From the IMG/VR virus record IMGVR_UViG_3300045125_000168, positions 1 through 64,000 of that record: 64,000 bases of DNA; one strand, written 5' to 3'. Of the stretch, positions 45,507-64,000 are shown in pieces. The notes under the pieces were generated by a model, which did no database searches, was not told where the DNA came from, and saw only the letters and a program-made list of their open reading frames with translations. Position numbers and translations under genes: made by a program. Each line of letters opens with the position of its first letter. The stretch's first letter is position 1.

Positions 45507-46749
45507 CTAGGTTTTAAACCCAGCGAAATACCAAGGCTGGAAGACGCAGCCCCTACAAGTTAGCTCTTTGACAAAAGCATCACCTATACTTTTTCTCAGA
45601 ATATTGATGGCTCCATTGATATCTGCGTTCACGAGCTTTCCGAGAGAGGACTGAAAAAGACCTCGTTTTACTCGTTTTCCCAGATATTTTTCTTGTCGAG
45701 AGATAGGCTCTAAGGCCAAAGAATCAGTTTTTGAGGTGTAGGATTCTTCGATAGTCTCGACGGTGAGGCCATGTTTCTCTGCTTTGTACTGCAAGAGAAA
45801 AAATTAACTTAGCGTGAGGAATTTGCACAAAATTCTGGTTGTTAATTCTTCCGAGATTGACTTCATTTTTCCAACCGATGTTTTTTCCGATAACGATCTT
45901 AGATATGTCGTTACTCAAGCAGTAAGAGATGATGTTACTTGAGACCTTATGCAGCGTGTCTTTAATTCTCCTCGACCTTTTCTTGGTGAGAGATATTTTC
46001 TGCTGCTTGAGCTTCATTTTTAAGGTTATGTTTTTCAAGGTCGATCTGGGATTGAAATTCAGCAGACTTTTTATTGTAGAACTGGTTTTGCGATTTGAGC
46101 TTTTTTCCTGAGAAAAGAAAGGCGTCACCGTCTGAAGACACGCAAGCTGCAAGGTTATTGGTGCCAAGGTCTATACCTAGAACCTTAGAAGTCTCGACCT
46201 TAGGTTGTTCCTCAACTTCATAGCAAAACTTGATTTTGAATTGCCCGTGAGACTGAGGTTTTAGAATTACGAGATCGATACTCTGGTCTTTAAGATACGA
46301 GGGAATCTGGAAATGGAGAAACTTCACCCCATACCTATTTCTCAAATATTTTGAAAGGCTGACTCTCACTTGACCATTTTCAACAGAGGAGACGGTCCAC
46401 CAAACTCTACCTCGAAAAGACCGTTTTTCTTATATTGCGGTGGTCTTATTTTCTCGTCAGGTTTTGCGACTTTTAGGTGTTTGAAAAAACTTTGGTAGTC
46501 TCTGTCTACGCGGTAAATAATAGCCTGGGAAACCCAAGAATTGAGCTTGTAGTATAGCTTAGGATTTTGATCTCTGACTTGGGAGTAGATTTTATACTTA
46601 TTGAGGTACTTGCCCTCTGTTTCTCGAAAAAACTGACGTTGATTGTACAGTGTGTAGTTATAGAGGCATTTGGAAATGTGTGAGGCTTCAGAAAGAATTT
46701 TCTTTTCCAAAGAGTTGAGGTTTAAGATTTCTTCATAGCTCAATATCAT
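45507..46749 (-). CDS. tnpB: TnpB RNA-guided endonuclease, 3 frameshifts
   Basis: N-terminal CLYNYTLY; RuvC-I GIDLGTNN; IVIGKNIGWK; EESYTSK; RuvC-III NADINGAINI. Confidence 0.9.
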
Positions 46750-55493: not shown

Positions 55494-56871
55494 CTAAATG
55501 GTGACCTCAGAGGCAGTATCATCCTCATCATCGATAGAAACTCTGCCCTTACTCGCCTTACTGCTCTTGCTCGGCTTGGTGTCGGGATTGTTCTTCAAAT
55601 ACTCATAATAAAGCTCTTGGGCTTTGCCTTGGCGGATTAACTCAAACCCAGCGTTTCGGAGTTTTGTCCCCTGCTCATCACTTAAAATCATAGCTTTGAA
55701 CTTTTGCCAAGTGATGTCACCCTCGAATCCTGAGAGCGAGATGTGCATAGTGTTGCCCATCTTCTCTTGCATGAGACCGCAGTGCTTCAGAAACATGAAG
55801 GTATCGTATACGGGGTCGATGCCCATCCCTGGTGTGCCTGCGGAGTCAAGCCAGAGACGATATTCCATATTGCGGAAGCTCGGACCAAATTTGTTTTTCT
55901 GGATTTTGGCGGTGCCGATGAAATAGCGGTCTTCGCCATGCCCATCGACCGTCTTTTCCGTAATCATCTTGGATTGACTACGCTTGGCTTCGATGCGCAA
56001 TTTGAAGTCGGGATAAAATTGAACGGAAGATCCCCCTGGCTCACTTTCGGGATTCTGAAACATCGCCATGGGGTTGATCGTCAAGTGGTTGGTGACAAGC
56101 CACGCGCAATTTTTGCGTCCGATGTAAGACTTTACCAGCGGGAAATGCGCGGCAAAGCAGCGGGCTTGAATGGCAACAGGCTCTTTCTCGGGCTCTTCAT
56201 CACGCGCTTCGGGGAGCATCGCTTTAAGCGAGTCGGTGATAAAAAGCATCTGGGGAGCGAAGTTTTCCGCTTCGACCACGAGCTTCTTTCAAACCTTCGT
56301 TAATGTGTCTCCAGGTCGGCTTGTACTCATACTCGTTCGCAATCAAGAAGTAGCGGTAGCAGCTTTCTTTATCGTCCCAAAGTTGGATTTTATCGGGCAG
56401 CTTTTTGAGAATGCTGTTCATATACCGAAATGTACTCTCAGCCGTAGTGCCAATGGCATAACGAAGCTGAGGAGTCACTTCCCAGGTGCCCTTTTTATTG
56501 CGGAACCCACACAGTTTATTCAGATCAAGCCCGATATTTTGCAGATAAGTCGGGTCGAATGACGACTCGTGGTCATTAGCTACCACTAAGGTCTGACGGG
56601 CGATCGCTTCTTTAATGGTATGGAAAAGAAACGTGCTCTTACCCGCACCTGTCGGACCTACGAGCGACGACATACGGCCTGGAGCAAAGCCTCCACCCAT
56701 AATGAGGTCTAAGGATAAAAGACCGCTCGAAATCGCTCCATTGACTCGCATGGACGGGTCCATCGTGCTGTAGACAAGCCCTTGGTTGTGGGCGGCATCG
56801 TCCAGAACCTTGTTGATATCCATGATCGACTGCAAACCGTCAAATTGCGTCAAAAGCGCATCTTGCGCCAT
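55494..56871 (-). CDS. recA: RecA/UvsX recombinase, one frameshift at about 56280
   Basis: SSGLLSLDLIMGGGFAPGR; GPTGAGKST; TDSLKAM; LVTNHL; EPGGSSVQFYPDFKLRI. Confidence 0.93.
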
Positions 56872-58950: not shown

Positions 58951-58995
58951 ATATCCCCCGTGTGCGACTTGAAAAAATCTTTCACAGGGGGAGTG

Positions 58996-59083
58996 CGGAG
59001 AGAGTGGGATTTGAACCCACGTTACCCTTTTGGGGTAAACTCGCTTTCCAAGCGAGCGCCTTCAGCCACTCGGCCACCTCTCC
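58996..59083 (-). tRNA. trnS-GGA: tRNA-Ser(GGA), CCA not encoded
   Basis: GGAGAGGTGGCCGAGTGGCTGAAGGCG, anticodon arm CTCGC-TTGGAAA-GCGAG, long variable arm, T-arm GTGGGTTCAAATCCCAC, acceptor TCTCTCC-G. Confidence 0.95.
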
Positions 59084-59272
59084 TCACGCAGCACTACCCG
59101 AGCACTTATATTCTGTGCTCCACGCGCAGCGTACTATATGGAGAATCAATCTTATGGGCCAAAAGATTGATTTCCAAGGTATAGCCCCTCTTGCCGTTGA
59201 TGAGGGGGCATACTCCCGCTTTTTCTCCTGTGTCCACAGGCTATTACGCTGCTCCCTTTTCACTATTTTTGC

Positions 59273-59300
59273 TAAAGTTTTTCAGGCTTTATGCCGATAA
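59273..59300 (+). promoter_or_regulatory. sigma28/FliA-like promoter (best match)
   Basis: TAAAGTTT...GCCGATAA (TAAA-N16-GCCGATAA), 27 nt before ATG 59328. Confidence 0.75.
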
Positions 59301-59327
59301 GTTATTCTTTGACGAGGTATGTAACCC

Positions 59328-59615
59328 ATGTCGATCCCTTATGAGCAATTTCGCCGCTTACTGGAAAAAACCCTCAAAGAGGATAAGGAGTTGTACGACA
59401 TGCTTGCTCATGTGGAGCGTGAGGAACTATTTGAGCTTGTATTTGAAAAACTGAAGGCGGTGAGCGTAGACACACGCCTAGTCGAAGAAACTGATCCTGA
59501 AAGCGGCAGTACGTCTTTGTATATCGTCACGAGAAAAAGACGGATGTTTCCTGGGAGGACTACGATCAAGTTGTTCTCGATATTTTGGAAAACATTTGTT
59601 CGGACTACAGCATAG
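59328..59615 (+). CDS. Hypothetical protein
   Basis: 95-aa ORF, GAGG SD, sigma28-like promoter; a hairpin CCCCTC-GTGA-GAGGGG follows at about 59637-59652. Confidence 0.55.
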   Translation: MSIPYEQFRRLLEKTLKEDKELYDMLAHVEREELFELVFEKLKAVSVDTRLVEETDPESGSTSLYIVTRKRRMFPGRTTIKLFSIFWKTFVRTTA

Positions 59616-59827
59616 TCGAGGACTACAGAAAAGAAACCCCTCGTGAGAGGGGGTGGAGTGAATCTATTTTTTTGAATGCTCCATCAAGATAGCCTATGAG
59701 GCCCTTCACGAGAAATTCAAAGCCGACTTTCAAGCTGAAGTGAGAAATATAATGTCTTCCTACCTTGAAGAATTAGACTCTACTTTAGAAAATATAAACT
59801 ATATTCTTATTAAAGGATGATATTAAA

Positions 59828-60739
59828 ATGCATACTCCAATCATCAAAAATATTTTAGTAGACAACGCTTTCAATTTGTATGTTGAGTTCGCCGATGGTG
59901 AGATGCGCTGTGTCAATTTAAAAACATGGGTTGATGGTAAATCAAAAATCAAAGATAACTTAGATTTTTGCAAGCAAGCATTTATTGAAGAAAACTGCAT
60001 CATTTCTTGGCCTAATGGGCTTTCTATAGACCCAGAAATAATTTATAAAAATGGAAAAAAAATTTACCTCTGACACAAAAATAGAACTTAATAAATTGAT
60101 AAAAAGCATGGCTAACAATTTAAGTGAGATTGTGGATAGGTACAGGGCACATAAATTTCCAGAAACGACATTTTCAGTCAAACGAGTTATTCACTTGAAG
60201 GTGATCGACGATTTGAAAATGATGCTTTATTTTGACGGCGATAACCAAGCTCGCATCGTTGATTTTTCTAAAATAATACTGAGTCATCCATCCCTCATGG
60301 CATTGAAAGATCCAAGTATTTTGAAAAAAGCTAAAATATTTGGGAGTGCGCTGCGATGGGAAGACCAGGATATAGATCTGGAAGCCGCTGACCTTTACGA
60401 TGACGGTGAAACTATGAATGCTGCTCCTCCGATCATAAAGTTAGATGTTTTGGGCAATTTTGCGTTGATAATCAAGTTTGAAGGATTACCACCAAAAAAG
60501 TGGACTTGAAGACCTTCAACCTTTTAGGTCCAAAGGCTCAAAAGCTACGACAGGACATTGAATATCTACGCTCTTTTAAAATTGTCGATGGCGTTCCTGA
60601 ATGGGATGGTATGGCCTTACTAGGCCCTGAGGACCTTTCGCGGCAGCAAAGAAACTCACTATTGAGGATTTGGATAGATACGTTGAGATGTGGCATCAAG
60701 AAAAACCGAATGTCTCGCTGCAAGACTACCTGGGATTAA
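59828..60739 (+). CDS. Three tandem DUF2442-like domains (1-3 genes; junctions fall at possible indels)
   Basis: LYVEFADGEMRCVNL...ISWPNGLSIDPEIIY; MLYFDGDNQARIVDF...ALRWEDQDIDLEAADLY; IIKFEG...KKVDL...VPEWDGMALLGPEDL. Confidence 0.7.
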
Positions 60740-61002
60740 ATGACGAAGAATACCAAGCGTTCGCTCATGGCGAGACTGTGTTAAAGCAGAAGTTTGAGGA
60801 AAAATACCGAGACATGAATGCGGAGCAAGCATGGGACCACTTCTTTTCAGAATTGGTTAAAAAATCGCATGACATCGAAGCAAGGTTTAATCAAGGCGAA
60901 GACGTCTCCGATTTTTTTGCCACTGAAGTTGACCCCGTGACGCATCAACCAAAACGAGAAAAAATGAATGACATCTCATTCACAACCGATCCTAAAAACT
61001 AG
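60670..61002 (+). CDS. Hypothetical phage protein
   Basis: VEMWHQ...SLQDYLGLNDEEY motif. Confidence 0.5.
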   Translation: MDRYVEMWHQEKPNVSLQDYLGLNDEEYQAFAHGETVLKQKFEEKYRDMNAEQAWDHFFSELVKKSHDIEARFNQGEDVSDFFATEVDPVTHQPKREKMNDISFTTDPKN

Positions 61003-61033
61003 GACCTAATCCGTCACGCTATCATTGCAAGAC

Positions 61034-61546
61034 TCAGAGAGCCGAGTCCTCAGTTATCCATTCCATTGCCGCATCTTCCGCAGCTACCCCATCAGCATGA
61101 TCTTCCGAAATCGCTCCAGGGTTGTTAAGAACTAGCTTGTATTCGATCTTCTGGTATTTCTGTCCGAGCCTATAAGTCAGGTCCCAGGGTTCGTTAGGCA
61201 TGTGACTATCGATCATCAATGTCGCGTCGTCGGCTTCCTTAAAAATATCGGCCAGACGTGTCATGATCCTAAGTTCTCGTCGTGAAAATAGCTTGTCGTT
61301 GAAATCGACGTTTGGACGTACATCCCAATCGATATCGTCAATACGAGTGAACATAACAGCACCAGCTAAGTCTGCCTTTGGTTGCTGGATTTCGTCGTGA
61401 AGTGCGACTGGAACTGGCCCATTCGGCCAAGCATAGTAATCGAGCCCGGTAACTATTCGGCCTGTTTCCTTGAAGTGCTCGAAATCCAAGAATGCAAGCA
61501 GCTTGAATAGCTTCCATTTGCGGCAATTCTTTGTGTTTGAAACAAA
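61034..61546 (-). pseudogene. Panacea (DUF4065/SocA-like) antitoxin, C-terminal part; interrupted by IS element 2
   Basis: FVSNTKNCRKWKLFKLLAFLDFEHFKETGRIVTGLDYYAWPNGPVP...FSRRELRIM...SHMPNEPW. Confidence 0.88.
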
Positions 61547-62732
61547 TTGACGCCCTCCCCATGGCTAAAGCCAGGGATTCCTAACTCACTTTAGAAGTTA
61601 GCGCATCGCGCCCGATGCGGAGAATGTTCAGTGCTGCGTTGACATCTCTATCGTGGATCGCTCCACAGCCGCAGCACACCCACTCTCTTATCGAGAGACC
61701 TTTCACCCCTTTGGGGGAGCTTTCTGGAATTACTCCACAGAAAGAACAGGTCCTCGTTGTGTTGGCCTCATCGACCTCCACGTACCAACGCCCACGCGCA
61801 CTCGCTTTGTATTTGAGCATTGTCTTAAACATCGTTGTCGCGGCATCATTGATGGACTTAGCCATTCTTGTTTTGGCAAGTTTTTTTGCACCAAAGTTTC
61901 CGACAACAATCACCTTATTTTCATCAGCAATCTTAGTGGTAGCCTTATGCAGATCGTCCATGCGCTTATTTTTGATTTTGGCATAGATACCTTTAGCTTG
62001 CCTTTTCTTTTTCCCTCTCTGTGCCTTTGCGAGCTTGCGCTCCATCATTCCGGTAGTAGCGTCCGTTGGACACCTTTTCCCCGTTTGATAGGGTTGCTAC
62101 AGATTTCAATCCTAAATCTATGCCTACCTCACCTTGAACTTTAGGTGCTCGTACCTCGTAGTCTATGGAGACACAAAGATACCATCTCCCGCGAGAGTCT
62201 TCGCAAAACTCACCTGCTCCATGAGCTACATCAGGCAACCGTTCCGGCTGAAACAATTTAAACTTGTGACCAGCGTAGGTGGCTTTGCCGTTTTTAAAAG
62301 AGATCCCTGTCTTCTTGAAAGGTATCCAACCAAGGGATTTTTTTCCACGCCATCTCAGTTTTCTTTTTTGGCTTTTTTGTCTTCTGAGAGCGTATTCCTG
62401 ACAGACCTCTTGGATGGTGGTCGAGTTAAGACCTAATTCTTTGCTAGAACCTTTTGTGAGCTTTTCTAAGTCTTGCGCGTTGAGCCACCGGCTATGGTTT
62501 CGCAAGGCATAAAAAGAAGTTTCATTACAAAAATTCCAGACATAATTGACGGCTCGTGCCATTTGTTTCAGGTGCTTGGCAGTGGCAGCGTCTTTTATGC
62601 GAATTTTAATAGTTTTTTTTGACATCGCATCGCGATGTTTACACTATTTTCGGCACCTTTTCAAGGTTCAGCTTCGCTGGGCGCGGCTTATATCCCCATG
62701 CCTAAAGGCAGGGGCTTTACGCCGTTTTCTCG
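61547..62732 (-). mobile_element. Non-autonomous IS200/IS605-family element 2 (tnpB only) with IS608-type ends
   Basis: LE hairpin CCCCTGCCTTTAGGCATGGGG with guide AAAG and flanking TTAC; RE hairpin CCCTGGCTTTAGCCATGGGG with guide GAAT, ending TCAA. Confidence 0.92.
61581..62625 (-). CDS. tnpB: TnpB RNA-guided endonuclease, one frameshift at about 62050
   Basis: QMARAVNYVWN; GIDLGLK; IVVGNFG; VDEANTTRTCSFCG; CCGCG..HDRDVNAALNI. Confidence 0.93.
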
Positions 62733-62780
62733 GTAAATGATCGCATGAATTAACTTTTCTCTTTGCGTGGGCAGTTTCAA
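62733..62780 (-). pseudogene. N-terminal 16 codons of the interrupted Panacea gene
   Basis: TTG AAA CTG CCC ACG CAA AGA GAA AAG TTA ATT CAT GCG ATC ATT TAC (MKLPTQREKLIHAIIY) joins in frame to FVSNTK at 61546. Confidence 0.85.
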
Positions 62781-62891
62781 TTTCTTTGCTCACCCTTTGC
62801 GCGTCAAAGAGTCAGTTACCCGGAAATCCCGGATAACTGATTATCCCAAATAACTCTTTAACATGCTGTAATTACTGGCTTTTAAGGCTAG

Positions 62892-62980
62892 TGGCGGAGG
62901 GGTGGGATTTGAACCCACGGACCAGTTTCCCAGTCGCGGCCTTAGCAAGGCCGTGCCTTAAGCCACTCGGCCACCTCTCC
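62892..62980 (-). tRNA. trnS-GCT: tRNA-Ser(GCT), CCA encoded; acceptor 3-prime strand one base short (probable indel error)
   Basis: GGAGAGGTGGCCGAGTGGCTTAAGGCA, CGGCC-TTGCTAA-GGCCG, variable arm, GTGGGTTCAAATCCCAC, ...CCCTCC-G-CCA. Confidence 0.92.
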
Positions 62981-63048
62981 ATCGAATGATGAATCAACTA
63001 TATCTCCCACAAAGATTTTTTCAAAGAACTTCTTGGGAGATCTTGTCG

Positions 63049-63393
63049 ATGTCGTTTCTCAAACGCCTGATGATCCTTGCCGTGAAGAAAACCGAATACT
63101 TTGTCTGGGACGAGATGGAATCCGATGGGATCGCTATCGGACCCTCAGCCAAAGAAAATGTTATCCTGCAAGTGCTCGGCTTCTCCAAGCTCGGTCTGCG
63201 CATCGCAGGACAAGCGCCGTTTGAGAAGTTCAAGTTCAACTGGTGGAGTCCCAACTCAGGCTTGATTCATACCGAACTAGAGGTCGTTACCCAGTCCAAA
63301 AACTATTTTGAAGCCAAGTTTGTGGGCTCAAACCCAGCGATCCAACGCGAGATCAAATTCTGGGAAAAACGCTATCCCAAAAAGGTTAGCTAG
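63049..63393 (+). CDS. Leader-tagged hypothetical protein
   Basis: GGGAG SD then MSFLKRLMILA; internal ATG of ORF 62986..63393. Confidence 0.55.
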   Translation: MSFLKRLMILAVKKTEYFVWDEMESDGIAIGPSAKENVILQVLGFSKLGLRIAGQAPFEKFKFNWWSPNSGLIHTELEVVTQSKNYFEAKFVGSNPAIQREIKFWEKRYPKKVS

Positions 63394-63818
63394 GTGAGAA
63401 CGTGTGCCCTGGTGTGGGTTCGAGGATATCGCGAATAAATTTTTCGACCATCTTTTCCAGGTTACCTTCGTCAATCATCACAGGCGAAAACCCTTCGTTG
63501 ACGATTTGTGCCGCCAATTCGATGCGGTCCCCTTTCTCACCTAACGGCTCAGTCCACAGGGCTTTGTACAAAACTTTGCTGCGAATAAGTGCCCGTTTTG
63601 CCTTTCGAGCGGTGCAATCGACGCAGTTGGCCGTTCCAAGCGCGAAGCTCTTTCAGCGAATGAAGGTAGGCGTTAGGAGTTTGGTAGTGAGTGATTTTAA
63701 ACAAATTTTTCGCGATTGGTAGCTGCAACTCGGAAAGTTTGTTGAGCGCCTTGCTACGGTGAAAAGCGTTGCTCCGCACTTCATTTATTTTTTCTTGGAT
63801 TTTTTGCAAAAAAACCAT
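63386..63818 (-). CDS. Leader-tagged DUF29-like protein, frameshift at about 63560
   Basis: MVFLQKIQEKINEVRS-NAFHRSKALNKLSELQLPIAKNLFKI...LKELRAW. Confidence 0.45.
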
Positions 63819-64000
63819 AATTAAGCGTCCACTTTTTTCAATGATTTAATAACTTCATCACGGCTCCGTCAACACTTCAACGCGAAAAATCTCACGTCGC
63901 CTAATCCTTGGGATTAAGTTTTTAATTTTTTTGATGAAGATCAGCATCAATCTTCGTTGATTATCTCGTGGAAAATATCTAATTCTTTTTCCAAAGTAAG

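What the first reader, a model, noticed from the sequence alone, without database searches (positions are those of the whole stretch)
61034..62780. TnpB element inserted seamlessly into the Panacea antitoxin gene: a reversible switch
Seen: removing 61547..62732 joins ...ATC ATT TAC to TTT GTT TCA AAC..., restoring MKLPTQREKLIHAIIY-FVSNTKNC in frame. The ends match IS608 exactly (AAAG/TTAC, GAAT/TCAA). Established: IS200/605 excise precisely via TnpA, and TnpB cuts the IS-free allele using the right flank as guide. Inference: TnpA in trans would restore the antitoxin, while TnpB (TAM about TTTAC, guide TTTGTTTCAAACACAAAG) would attack phages with an intact Panacea gene. This amounts to a gene drive against, or an on/off switch for, an anti-defence gene.
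Basis: partly seen in the sequence, partly recalled or inferred. Interest (0 to 1): 0.62.

Follow-up and report, generated by a model that had tools for sequence, protein, structure and literature searches.

The report
TnpB transposon splits phage antitoxin gene
A small IS608-like mobile element carrying only an RNA-guided nuclease gene (tnpB) has inserted, without leaving a scar, into a lone antitoxin-type gene of a very large phage. This is an ordinary transposon insertion that could in principle be reversed, not a demonstrated genetic switch.

Summary
Removing 61547..62732 joins a 16-codon head (62780..62733) to a 170-codon body (61546..61037; stop 61036..61034). The resulting 186-residue Panacea (PF13274) protein aligns without a gap to 20 full-length homologues.

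The insert is a 1186-bp IS200/IS605-family element without tnpA. It has IS608-type ends: TTAC left flank, AAAG and GAAT guides, subterminal hairpins, and a TCAA right end. It carries tnpB and a structured omega-RNA-like 3' region.

Related copies end at exactly the same bases. One sister copy (about 92-93% identical, intact TnpB) sits in a GIY-YIG gene of a related phage. That phage lacks the whole Panacea cassette, so the element has moved within this phage lineage.

The window's tnpB has one extra base (62049-62051). However, 8 of 10 genes of the related phage that could be mapped also fall into two or more frames on this contig, and tnpB shows 55 synonymous versus 12 non-synonymous codon differences from its sister. 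The frameshift is therefore probably an assembly error.

No TnpA is present in the 236-kb record, and neither an empty nor an excised allele appears in any searchable data. The switch and gene-drive reading follows from known IS605/TnpB biology but is generic to such insertions and unshown here.

Verdict: a new member of a known kind, of modest interest.

The parts
62733..62780 (-). 5' fragment of the Panacea gene: TTG start plus 15 codons, ending in the TTAC target (62736-62733 on the minus strand)
   Evidence: The N-terminus is collinear with homologues (6 residues before REKL, as in MLITHEREKL).
61547..62732 (-). Non-autonomous IS200/IS605-family (IS608-like) element, 1186 bp, holding tnpB and an omega-RNA-like region but no tnpA
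   Evidence: Its boundaries coincide with the ends of similarity to L006, L007 and L106.
62694..62732 (-). Left end: 14-nt spacer, AAAG guide tetranucleotide (62718-62715) and imperfect palindrome CCCCTGCC-TTTA-GGCATGGGG (62714-62694). TTAC lies 18 nt 5' of the hairpin foot.
   Evidence: IS608 has TTAC 19 nt 5' of IP_L and G_L = AAAG (PMC3201880).
62050..62625 (-). tnpB N-terminal part (codons 1-192), with RuvC-I GIDLG
   Evidence: 72.5% aa identity to L007 TnpB over residues 4-196.
62049..62051 (-). Site of one extra base (CGGA here; CGA in L106, CGG in L007) that shifts the tnpB frame
   Evidence: (table 4). Probably an assembly indel.
61581..62048 (-). tnpB C-terminal part: Gly at the RuvC-II position (VVGNF), conserved alternative Glu (YVEVDE), CxxC...CxxC zinc finger, RuvC-III HDRD, stop TAG 61583-61581
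   Evidence: Cas12f1-like_TNB E 1.6e-22.
61547..61776 (-). Omega-RNA-like structured region overlapping the tnpB 3' end and the right end: GAAT 61580-61577, hairpin 61576-61557, TCAA 61550-61547
   Evidence: Fold z-score -4.78. 9 compensated pairs in 3 sequences and 19 in 12 sequences. No Rfam match.
61531..61546 (-). Predicted guide: the first 16 nt of the right flank (TTTGTTTCAAACACAA), which are also Panacea codons 17-22
   Evidence: Inferred from the ISDra2/IS608 model. The sequence is unique in the 236-kb record.
61034..61546 (-). 3' fragment of the Panacea gene (170 codons plus stop), holding the PF13274 domain
62812..62840 (.). Palindromic hairpin between tRNA-Ser(gct) and the Panacea start; right edge of the Panacea cassette that the related phage lacks
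62893..62981 (-). tRNA-Ser (anticodon GCT), immediately upstream of the cassette

Best explanation
This is an ordinary insertion of a mobile element into an accessory phage gene.

Setting (shown): the window belongs to a jumbo-phage-like genome with baseplate, tail fibre, DnaB and UvsX/RecA genes. Between a DUF2442-family gene and tRNA-Ser it carries a single-gene cassette encoding a Panacea (PanA-type) antitoxin homologue. That gene has no partner toxin.

Event (shown): a non-autonomous IS608-like element has inserted 3' of a TTAC inside codons 16-17 of that gene, in the same orientation as the gene. It made no target duplication and it splits the gene. The element consists of a left-end hairpin, tnpB, an omega-RNA-like region and a right-end hairpin. 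Its ends, its relatives and the collinearity of the rejoined gene are all shown.

Consequences (inferred from IS608/ISDra2 biology):
- Only a Y1 TnpA supplied in trans could excise the element. Such a gene lies next to the related copy in L006, but none is in this record. Excision would restore the gene exactly.
- TnpB loaded with an omega RNA whose guide is the right flank would cut an IS-free allele (TTAC followed by TTTGTTTCAAACACAA). Recombination could then copy the element back in, giving homing or retention.

The single frameshift in tnpB is most likely an indel error of this assembly. The real gene is probably intact and under purifying selection.

Nothing indicates that the Panacea gene is a selected target or that the insertion serves the phage as a switch. 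It is best read as a tolerated knockout of a dispensable accessory gene by a selfish element that is mobile in this phage lineage.
For: - Gene restored: the rejoined protein aligns gap-free to 20 homologues; Pfam PF13274.
- Ends: similarity to L007, L006 and L106 starts after TTAC and stops at TCAA. The right-end motif is conserved, with stem covariation, in 16 loci. The IS608 parameters match.
- Autonomy: L006 carries a Y1 TnpA (E 7.5e-43) between the same kind of ends. The record holds no Y1_Tnp.
- Mobility: sister copy L106 is 92% identical with an intact 347-aa TnpB. It lies in a related phage whose flanks are 78-86% identical to G000 135.6-138.7 kb. It sits inside a GIY-YIG gene at a TTAC that reads TTGC and is unoccupied in this record. 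That phage lacks window 60965-62811 entirely.
- TnpB under selection: 55 synonymous versus 12 non-synonymous codon differences from the sister copy, and no in-frame stop. Catalytic Asp residues, zinc-finger Cys residues and the alternative Glu are conserved.
- Frameshift probably an artefact: 8 of 10 mappable genes of the related phage fall into two or more frames on this contig. RecA, an IscB-like gene and a second tnpB are split too. All five indels in the element lie in short same-base runs, and two of them compensate each other.
- Omega RNA.
- Orphan antitoxin: in 4 of 4 bacterial contexts an overlapping, mutually homologous 138-163 aa partner follows the gene. No such gene is in the record.
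Against: - No reads of the source sample could be laid, so neither the frameshift nor any excision product could be checked.
- TnpA is absent from the record and the host is unknown.
- The TnpB clade lacks the canonical RuvC-II Glu. The paper consulted (PMC10691335) infers activity of such 'rearranged' TnpBs from structure models and says it remains to be studied experimentally.
- The omega-RNA evidence is structural only. Part of the covariation lies in the right-end hairpin, which TnpA also needs as DNA.
- That the gene is dispensable is inferred only from its absence in relatives.
Confidence: 0.8

Rival explanations
1. The insertion is a functional, reversible on/off switch of an anti-defence gene. 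Alternatively it is a gene drive that spreads the knockout by cutting co-infecting phages that carry the intact Panacea allele.
For: - The geometry is right: TTAC plus a unique right flank as guide.
- TnpB is under purifying selection and probably intact.
- The phage encodes a UvsX/RecA-type recombinase that could repair from an IS-bearing template.
- The element has moved within the lineage.
- TnpB homing and a plasmid gene drive are published (10.1101/2023.03.14.532601; PMC11870625).
- The gene is an orphan antitoxin homologue.
Against: - No TnpA in the record.
- No empty or excised allele anywhere searchable, and no second sample of this gene at all.
- Relatives lack the whole cassette and so offer no target.
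- The sister copy sits in an unrelated gene, and TTAC is common, at 1157 sites.
- Every IS605 insertion has these properties, so no special function is implied.
- The anti-defence role is untested.
Confidence: 0.1
2. Dead relic. The tnpB frameshift is real, the element can no longer home, and both it and the split Panacea gene are decaying pseudogenes in a degenerating prophage. IMG/VR classes the record as a provirus.
For: - As assembled, tnpB is in two frames.
- Many other genes on the contig are frameshifted.
- The record was cut as a 'provirus' from a 351-kb contig.
Against: - The damage consists of frameshifts, in 8 of 10 mappable genes including structural neighbours.
- Within tnpB there is no in-frame stop and codon differences are 55 synonymous to 12 non-synonymous, which does not look like long neutral decay.
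- The indels sit in short same-base runs, including a compensating pair. That pattern is more typical of consensus errors.
- Both Panacea pieces are still open.
Confidence: 0.08
3. Assembly chimera. A repeated IS was wrongly placed inside the gene by the assembler.
For: The element family is repeated in related samples, and contigs break at its hairpins (L006 starts and L106 ends in a hairpin).
Against: - Both junctions are exact IS605 junctions, and together they rebuild one conserved reading frame without loss or gain of a base. A misjoin would not do this.
- Only one full copy exists in the 236-kb record.
Confidence: 0.02

Closest known systems
IS608 of Helicobacter pylori (IS200/IS605 family)
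   Same: - Target/left cleavage site TTAC, with the element inserted 3' of it and no duplication.
- Right cleavage site TCAA inside the element.
- AAAG and GAAT tetranucleotides 5' of imperfect subterminal hairpins.
- Spacing of 18 nt (IS608: 19) on the left. On the right a 6-7 nt linker puts the end of TCAA about 10-11 nt from the hairpin foot (IS608: TCAA 10 nt 3' of the foot). See PMC3201880.
   Different: - No tnpA in the element or the record.
- TnpB has Gly at the RuvC-II position.
- It resides in a large phage genome.
- The GAAT guide of IS608 is cited from my own knowledge; the paper text I read confirms only AAAG, TTAC and TCAA.
ISDra2 TnpB / omega RNA (solved structures 8BF8, 8EXA, 8H1J)
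   Same: - Same domain order and alignment over the RuvC and zinc-finger part (E 6e-23).
- RuvC-I Asp and RuvC-III Asp are conserved.
- A structured RNA region overlaps the 3' end of tnpB and the right end.
   Different: - The ISDra2 motif IGTEH (with the RuvC-II Glu, E278 by my own numbering of ISDra2) aligns to VVGNL/VVGNF here.
- The TAM would be TTAC, not TTGAT.
- Only about 25-30% identical by my estimate (not computed). No activity data.
RuvC-II-rearranged TnpB clades (RIIr) of Altae-Tran et al. 2023, PMC10691335
   Same: - Catalytic Glu replaced by Gly.
- A conserved alternative Glu about 42-45 residues downstream (E287/E290 of L007).
- The paper notes that some such branches are virus-associated.
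   Different: I did not place this protein on their tree. The compensation by the alternative Glu is a structure-based prediction in that paper and was not tested here.
TnpB/IscB homing and retention (Meers et al., 10.1101/2023.03.14.532601) and the TnpB gene drive in multicopy plasmids (Mears et al. 2025 preprint, PMC11870625)
   Same: The same logic applies: the guide records the insertion site, the IS-free allele is cut, and IS-bearing copies are favoured. A replicating phage genome is a multicopy replicon with its own recombinase.
   Different: Nothing of this was observed here. The phage setting is an extrapolation.
PanA-PanT (Panacea) toxin-antitoxin pairs, Kurata et al. 2022 (PMC8832971)
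   Same: - PF13274 domain.
- The closest bacterial homologues (44-50% identity) sit in two-gene operons with an overlapping downstream partner.
   Different: - The phage copy has no partner gene next to it or anywhere in the record.
- The partner family has no Pfam or PADLOC match.
- Neutralisation is untested.

Membership tests
IS200/IS605 family (IS608-like) | Insertion 3' of a specific tetranucleotide with no target-site duplication and no terminal inverted repeats | tested here: met
   TTAC flanks three independent copies. The rejoined flanks give a gap-free conserved ORF.
IS200/IS605 family (IS608-like) | Subterminal imperfect palindromes at both ends, with guide tetranucleotides 5' of them and TCAA as the right cleavage site | tested here: met
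   Stem covariation across 16 loci. Compared with PMC3201880.
IS200/IS605 family (IS608-like) | Y1 (HUH) transposase TnpA | tested here: not met
   No PF01797 match in the 236-kb record and no tblastn hit with the L006 TnpA. The element is therefore non-autonomous. Relative L006 has TnpA.
IS200/IS605 family (IS608-like) | Evidence of mobility (copies at different sites) | tested here: met
   Window (Panacea gene), L007 (intergenic), L106 (GIY-YIG gene of a related phage, at a site that is empty in this record).
TnpB RNA-guided nuclease (OMEGA) | Uninterrupted ORF with OrfB_IS605 and zinc-finger (TNB) domains | tested here: inconclusive
   The domains are present, but one extra base splits the ORF. 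A contig-wide excess of frameshifts suggests an artefact. Source reads are unavailable.
TnpB RNA-guided nuclease (OMEGA) | Canonical RuvC D-E-D triad | tested here: not met
   D (GIDLG) and D (HDRD) are present. The Glu position is Gly in the window, L006, L007, L106 and all 17 other aligned relatives. This matches the 'rearranged' clades of PMC10691335.
TnpB RNA-guided nuclease (OMEGA) | Omega RNA from the 3' end of tnpB and the right end, with the guide read from the flank | tested here: inconclusive
   Stable conserved fold (z -4.78; compensated pairs). No RNA data and no Rfam family match.
TnpB RNA-guided nuclease (OMEGA) | Guide- and TAM-dependent DNA cleavage | not testable with these tools
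   Needs an interference or in vitro cleavage assay.
Panacea (PanA) antitoxin | PF13274 domain above the curated cut-off | tested here: met
   48.9 bits against a cut-off of 25.7. 48 homologues, all carrying PF13274.
Panacea (PanA) antitoxin | Adjacent cognate toxin gene (two-gene operon) | tested here: not met
   A convergent ORF lies downstream and a tRNA upstream. No homologue of the bacterial partner is in the record. The bacterial homologues do have it.
Panacea (PanA) antitoxin | Binds and neutralises a toxin | not testable with these tools
   The complex prediction gave no verdict.
Reversible (phase-variable) gene switch | Both occupied and restored alleles present in one population, with the machinery for switching available | tested here: not met
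   The empty-site 33-mer and a codon-degenerate version were absent from the viral and metagenome collections. No TnpA. This is a weak test, because no other sample of this gene exists in the collections.

The most novel reading that the evidence does not exclude
OMEGA elements (this TnpB element, plus the IscB-like and second TnpB elements in the same genome) may spread as RNA-guided homing drives among replicating and co-infecting jumbo-phage genomes. In that reading this copy holds an orphan antitoxin-type counter-defence gene in an off state. The off state would be copied into phages that carry the intact allele and could revert wherever a host supplies TnpA. It would be a mobile, conditional knockout of a phage counter-defence gene.
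Probability: 0.1. Interest if true: 0.7.

Novelty: new member of a known kind. Interest (0 to 1): 0.35.

Why it matters
This is a clean natural example of an IS605/TnpB element caught inside a phage accessory gene. A sister copy sits at another site in a related phage, and the corresponding empty site is visible in this genome.

If TnpB homing works between phage genomes as it does for chromosomes and plasmids, loci like this one would allow a direct test of RNA-guided gene drive in virus populations. They would also show how such elements reshape phage counter-defence repertoires.

As it stands, the locus adds a well-defined TTAC-type, RuvC-II-rearranged TnpB with a predicted guide and TAM. 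It adds no new principle.

Tried and rejected
- **Alternative genetic code** as the cause of short ORFs: opening any one stop codon does not lengthen the longest frames. Rejected.
- **ORF-overlap statistics** to measure frameshift load: confounded by GC content and uninformative. Replaced by mapping a relative's genes.
- **Rfam**, at gathering and at permissive thresholds: no omega-RNA family.
- **Promoter/terminator scan** of 60900-63000: nothing found; not informative for a phage.
- **Empty-site search** (33-mer in viral contigs; codon-degenerate pattern in metagenome contigs) and **occupied-junction search**: no hits. The negative result for the empty site therefore carries little weight.
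- **The search for related loci with the Panacea protein** in viral contigs: none.
- **Sequencing runs**: only 6% of the sampled words were held. The runs turned out to hold a related phage and a sister IS, not the source sample. Excision junctions and the frameshift could therefore not be checked.
- **Left-end/target consensus from distant relatives**: the Burkholderia-type relatives (41-46% TnpB identity) have a different left end and no TTAC. TAM evidence rests on three close copies.
- **Complex prediction**, phage PanA body with the bacterial partner from L103: no verdict (score 0.01). This is evidence neither for nor against binding.
- **PADLOC and Pfam on the partner family**: no match.
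- **Structure prediction of TnpB** to inspect the alternative Glu: not run, because the tool returns no coordinates with which to measure the site.
- **The 113 kb of the source contig beyond the record**: I did not try to reach it.
Full report
**What is in the sequence.** On the minus strand a TTG start at 62780 is followed by 15 codons ending ...ATC ATT TAC at 62733. A 1186-bp insert follows (62732..61547). From 61546 the same frame continues, TTT GTT TCA AAC..., to a stop at 61034.

The 170-aa body carries the SocA_Panacea domain (PF13274, 48.9 bits, E 1.5e-12). It is the only such gene in the 236-kb record. I joined the two pieces in a script and aligned the 186-residue product with 20 database homologues of 183-206 aa. 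There is no gap at the junction, and the residues on both sides are the conserved ones: REKLIHAIIY|FVSNTKNC here and REKLIQAIIFFVSNTQHC in P0006.

**What the insert is.** Read on the minus strand, the insert comes directly after the flanking TTAC and contains, in order:
- 14 nt, then AAAG and an imperfect hairpin (CCCCTGCC-TTTA-GGCATGGGG)
- tnpB
- GAAT directly after the stop codon, then a second imperfect hairpin (CCCTGGC-TTTA-GCCATGGGG)
- a 6-nt linker and TCAA as the last four bases

IS608 has TTAC 19 nt 5' of its left palindrome, TCAA 10 nt 3' of its right one, and AAAG as the left guide (PMC3201880). That GAAT is the IS608 right guide is from my own knowledge.

The ends are not a chance resemblance. 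DNA similarity to two viral-contig relatives begins right after their own TTAC and stops at TCAA, and the flanks are unrelated. These relatives are L007 (TnpB about 73-81% aa identity) and L006 (about 69-71%). L006 starts inside the left hairpin and carries a Y1 transposase gene between the ends (PF01797, E 7.5e-43). The family therefore has autonomous members. The motif GGAAT-hairpin-GAGGxxGTCAA recurs in 16 related loci, including Burkholderia, Malikia and Chitinophaga genomes, with many compensatory stem changes.

The window's element has no tnpA, and the whole record has none either. It is a non-autonomous, tnpB-only IS200/IS605 element.

**TnpB.** As assembled, tnpB lies in two frames: 62625..62050 and 62048..61581. 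Against L007 there is exactly one break and no in-frame stop. The window reads CGGA where L007 has CGG and the sister copy has CGA.

The RuvC-I Asp (GIDLG), the RuvC-III Asp (HDRD) and the four zinc-finger Cys are present. The residue that aligns with the RuvC-II Glu in the ISDra2 motif IGTEH (E278 by my own numbering of ISDra2) is Gly. This holds for the window and for all 20 full-length relatives examined, and a conserved Glu pair (vEvdE) lies 42-45 residues downstream. That is the 'RuvC-II rearranged' type described by Altae-Tran et al. 2023. They predict from models that the alternative Glu completes the site, and they note that experimental study is outstanding (PMC10691335). The Gly is thus a clade feature, not damage.

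**Is the frameshift real?** I could not lay reads of the source sample. The only public runs found hold 6% of the sampled words, but they proved useful in another way.

An exact-sequence cluster look-up led to a Logan contig, L106. It carries a sister element that is 92% identical by blastn (71 differences in the 1044 tnpB bases) and encodes an intact 347-aa TnpB. Read around the extra base, the window's tnpB differs from the sister at 67 codons, 55 of them synonymous. That indicates strong purifying selection up to the present or nearly so.

The five one-base indels between the two elements all lie in short same-base runs. Two of them, in A-runs, compensate each other at codons 85-86.

I then mapped the genes of the related phage's contigs L108 and L106 onto the record. 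Eight of the ten that could be mapped fall into two or more frames. RecA/UvsX, an IscB-like gene and a second tnpB are split as well.

Frameshifts in nearly every gene, together with a clear selection signal in tnpB, point to an indel-rich assembly rather than to biology. I put about 85% on the tnpB frameshift being an artefact.

**Omega-RNA-like region.** The last 230 nt of the element fold far better than shuffled controls (-97.8 kcal/mol, z -4.78). The three close relatives keep the fold with 9 compensated pairs. Twelve relatives keep the terminal helices with 19 compensated pairs, including a hairpin inside the tnpB 3' coding region. Rfam has no matching family.

By the ISDra2/IS608 model, the guide would be the first 16 or so bases of the right flank (61546..61531). 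That sequence is unique in the record. Three insertion sites read ATTTAC, GGTTAC and GGTTAC, so the TAM is most simply TTAC.

**Context: the phage and its relatives.** The window encodes a baseplate J/wedge protein, a tail fibre, a DnaB-type helicase and a UvsX/RecA-type recombinase. It is part of a 236-kb IMG/VR record cut from a 351-kb JGI contig.

A related phage is present in a different study as contig L108, 80-90% identical and collinear over window 58989..64000 and on to 67236 of the record. In it, the DUF2442-family gene is followed directly by the palindromic hairpin and tRNA-Ser. Window 60965-62811, which holds the Panacea gene with its insert, is absent. A third relative has two other genes at this place. 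The Panacea gene is therefore a strain-specific single-gene cassette in a variable spot.

In that related phage, the sister element sits inside a GIY-YIG nuclease gene. The homologous site in this record is unoccupied and reads TTGC instead of TTAC. One differing base at this level of divergence is not significant. The two element copies are more alike (92-93%) than the phage backbones (78-87%). The element has therefore moved within this phage lineage.

**The Panacea gene as 'anti-defence'.** In four of four bacterial contexts of the closest homologues (44-50% identity), the gene is followed by an overlapping ORF of 138-163 aa. These ORFs are homologous to each other (E 4e-39 to 5e-6) and have no Pfam or PADLOC match. 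That is the layout of PanA-PanT pairs (PMC8832971).

The phage copy has a convergent ORF downstream and a tRNA upstream. No partner homologue exists anywhere in the record. An orphan antitoxin in a phage is a reasonable candidate for neutralising a host toxin, but this is inference. A complex prediction gave no verdict.

**How it most likely works, and what is not shown.**

Shown:
- the insertion and its exact boundaries
- family membership of the ends
- restorability of the gene
- mobility of the family in this phage lineage
- selection on tnpB
- a conserved RNA-like fold

Inferred from established IS608/ISDra2 work and the homing papers:
- A TnpA supplied in trans could excise the element precisely.
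- TnpB with omega RNA would cut an IS-free allele.
- Recombination, for which the phage has its own recombinase, would restore the element.

Not shown:
- any empty or excised allele
- any TnpA source
- nuclease activity of this rearranged clade
- any benefit to the phage

TTAC occurs 1157 times in the record and three times on the sense strand of this gene, and the sister copy chose a different gene. The simplest account is a chance insertion into a dispensable accessory gene. The switch and drive properties are those of every IS605/TnpB insertion.

**Verdict.** This is a new member of a known kind, and interest is modest. The locus would still be a convenient test case for RNA-guided homing between phage genomes.

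Noticed in passing
window 45507-46749 (minus strand): A second, unrelated tnpB (OrfB_IS605 E 5e-17; TNB E 2e-10) lies in four overlapping frames as assembled. It also has Gly at the RuvC-II position (VIGKN) and EESYTSK downstream.
   Followed up: partly
G000:C1:144711-146194 (locus L002, outside the window): An IscB-like gene (RRXRR + HNH; Pfam E 9e-41 and 3e-12) is split by a frameshift. It is flanked by hairpins nearly identical to the right-end hairpin of the tnpB element, at 144734 and 146296. The same TnpA may therefore serve both elements.
   Followed up: partly
whole record; examples window 55494-56871 (RecA/UvsX), 63389-63818, 63953-64434 and G000 135659-137243: Eight of ten genes of a related phage that could be mapped fall into two or more reading frames on this contig. 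The assembly (JGI 3300045125, Ga0494335_066) appears rich in one-base indels, so gene calls from it should be treated with care.
   Followed up: yes
window 60965-62811 versus L108:3387-3412: A related phage (Logan contig SRR33648760_7747) has about 24 nt where this window has the whole Panacea cassette. A third relative (an ENA contig) has two other minus-strand genes (163 and 158 aa) there. The spot next to tRNA-Ser(gct) is a variable cargo site. A partial copy of the hairpin arm (TCAGTTATCC) lies at 61048-61057 at the cassette's other edge.
   Followed up: partly
G000:C1:138557-139051 (L107:2958-3452) versus L106:1700-1830: The sister IS interrupts a GIY-YIG nuclease gene in the related phage. 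In this record the site is empty and reads TTGC instead of TTAC, so it would be refractory to both insertion and TnpB cleavage. One base difference at this divergence is not significant.
   Followed up: partly
window 59828-61002 (plus strand): Several ORFs here (DUF2442 hits at 59828-60073 and 60051-60509, then 60500-60739 and 60670-61002) correspond at least in part to one 344-aa gene in the related phage and to a 454-aa gene in a third relative. The differences include 259-nt and 67-nt indels. The region 59600-60400 has only 31-36% GC.
   Followed up: partly
window 62368-62373 (tnpB codons 85-86): Two compensating one-base changes in adjacent A-runs (A6/A6 here, A5/A7 in the sister copy) turn AK into SQ. 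All relatives have AK.
   Followed up: yes
window 58995-59083 and 62893-62981: Two tRNA-Ser genes (anticodons GGA and GCT) bracket the 3.8-kb variable region that holds the DUF2442 genes and the Panacea cassette.
   Followed up: no
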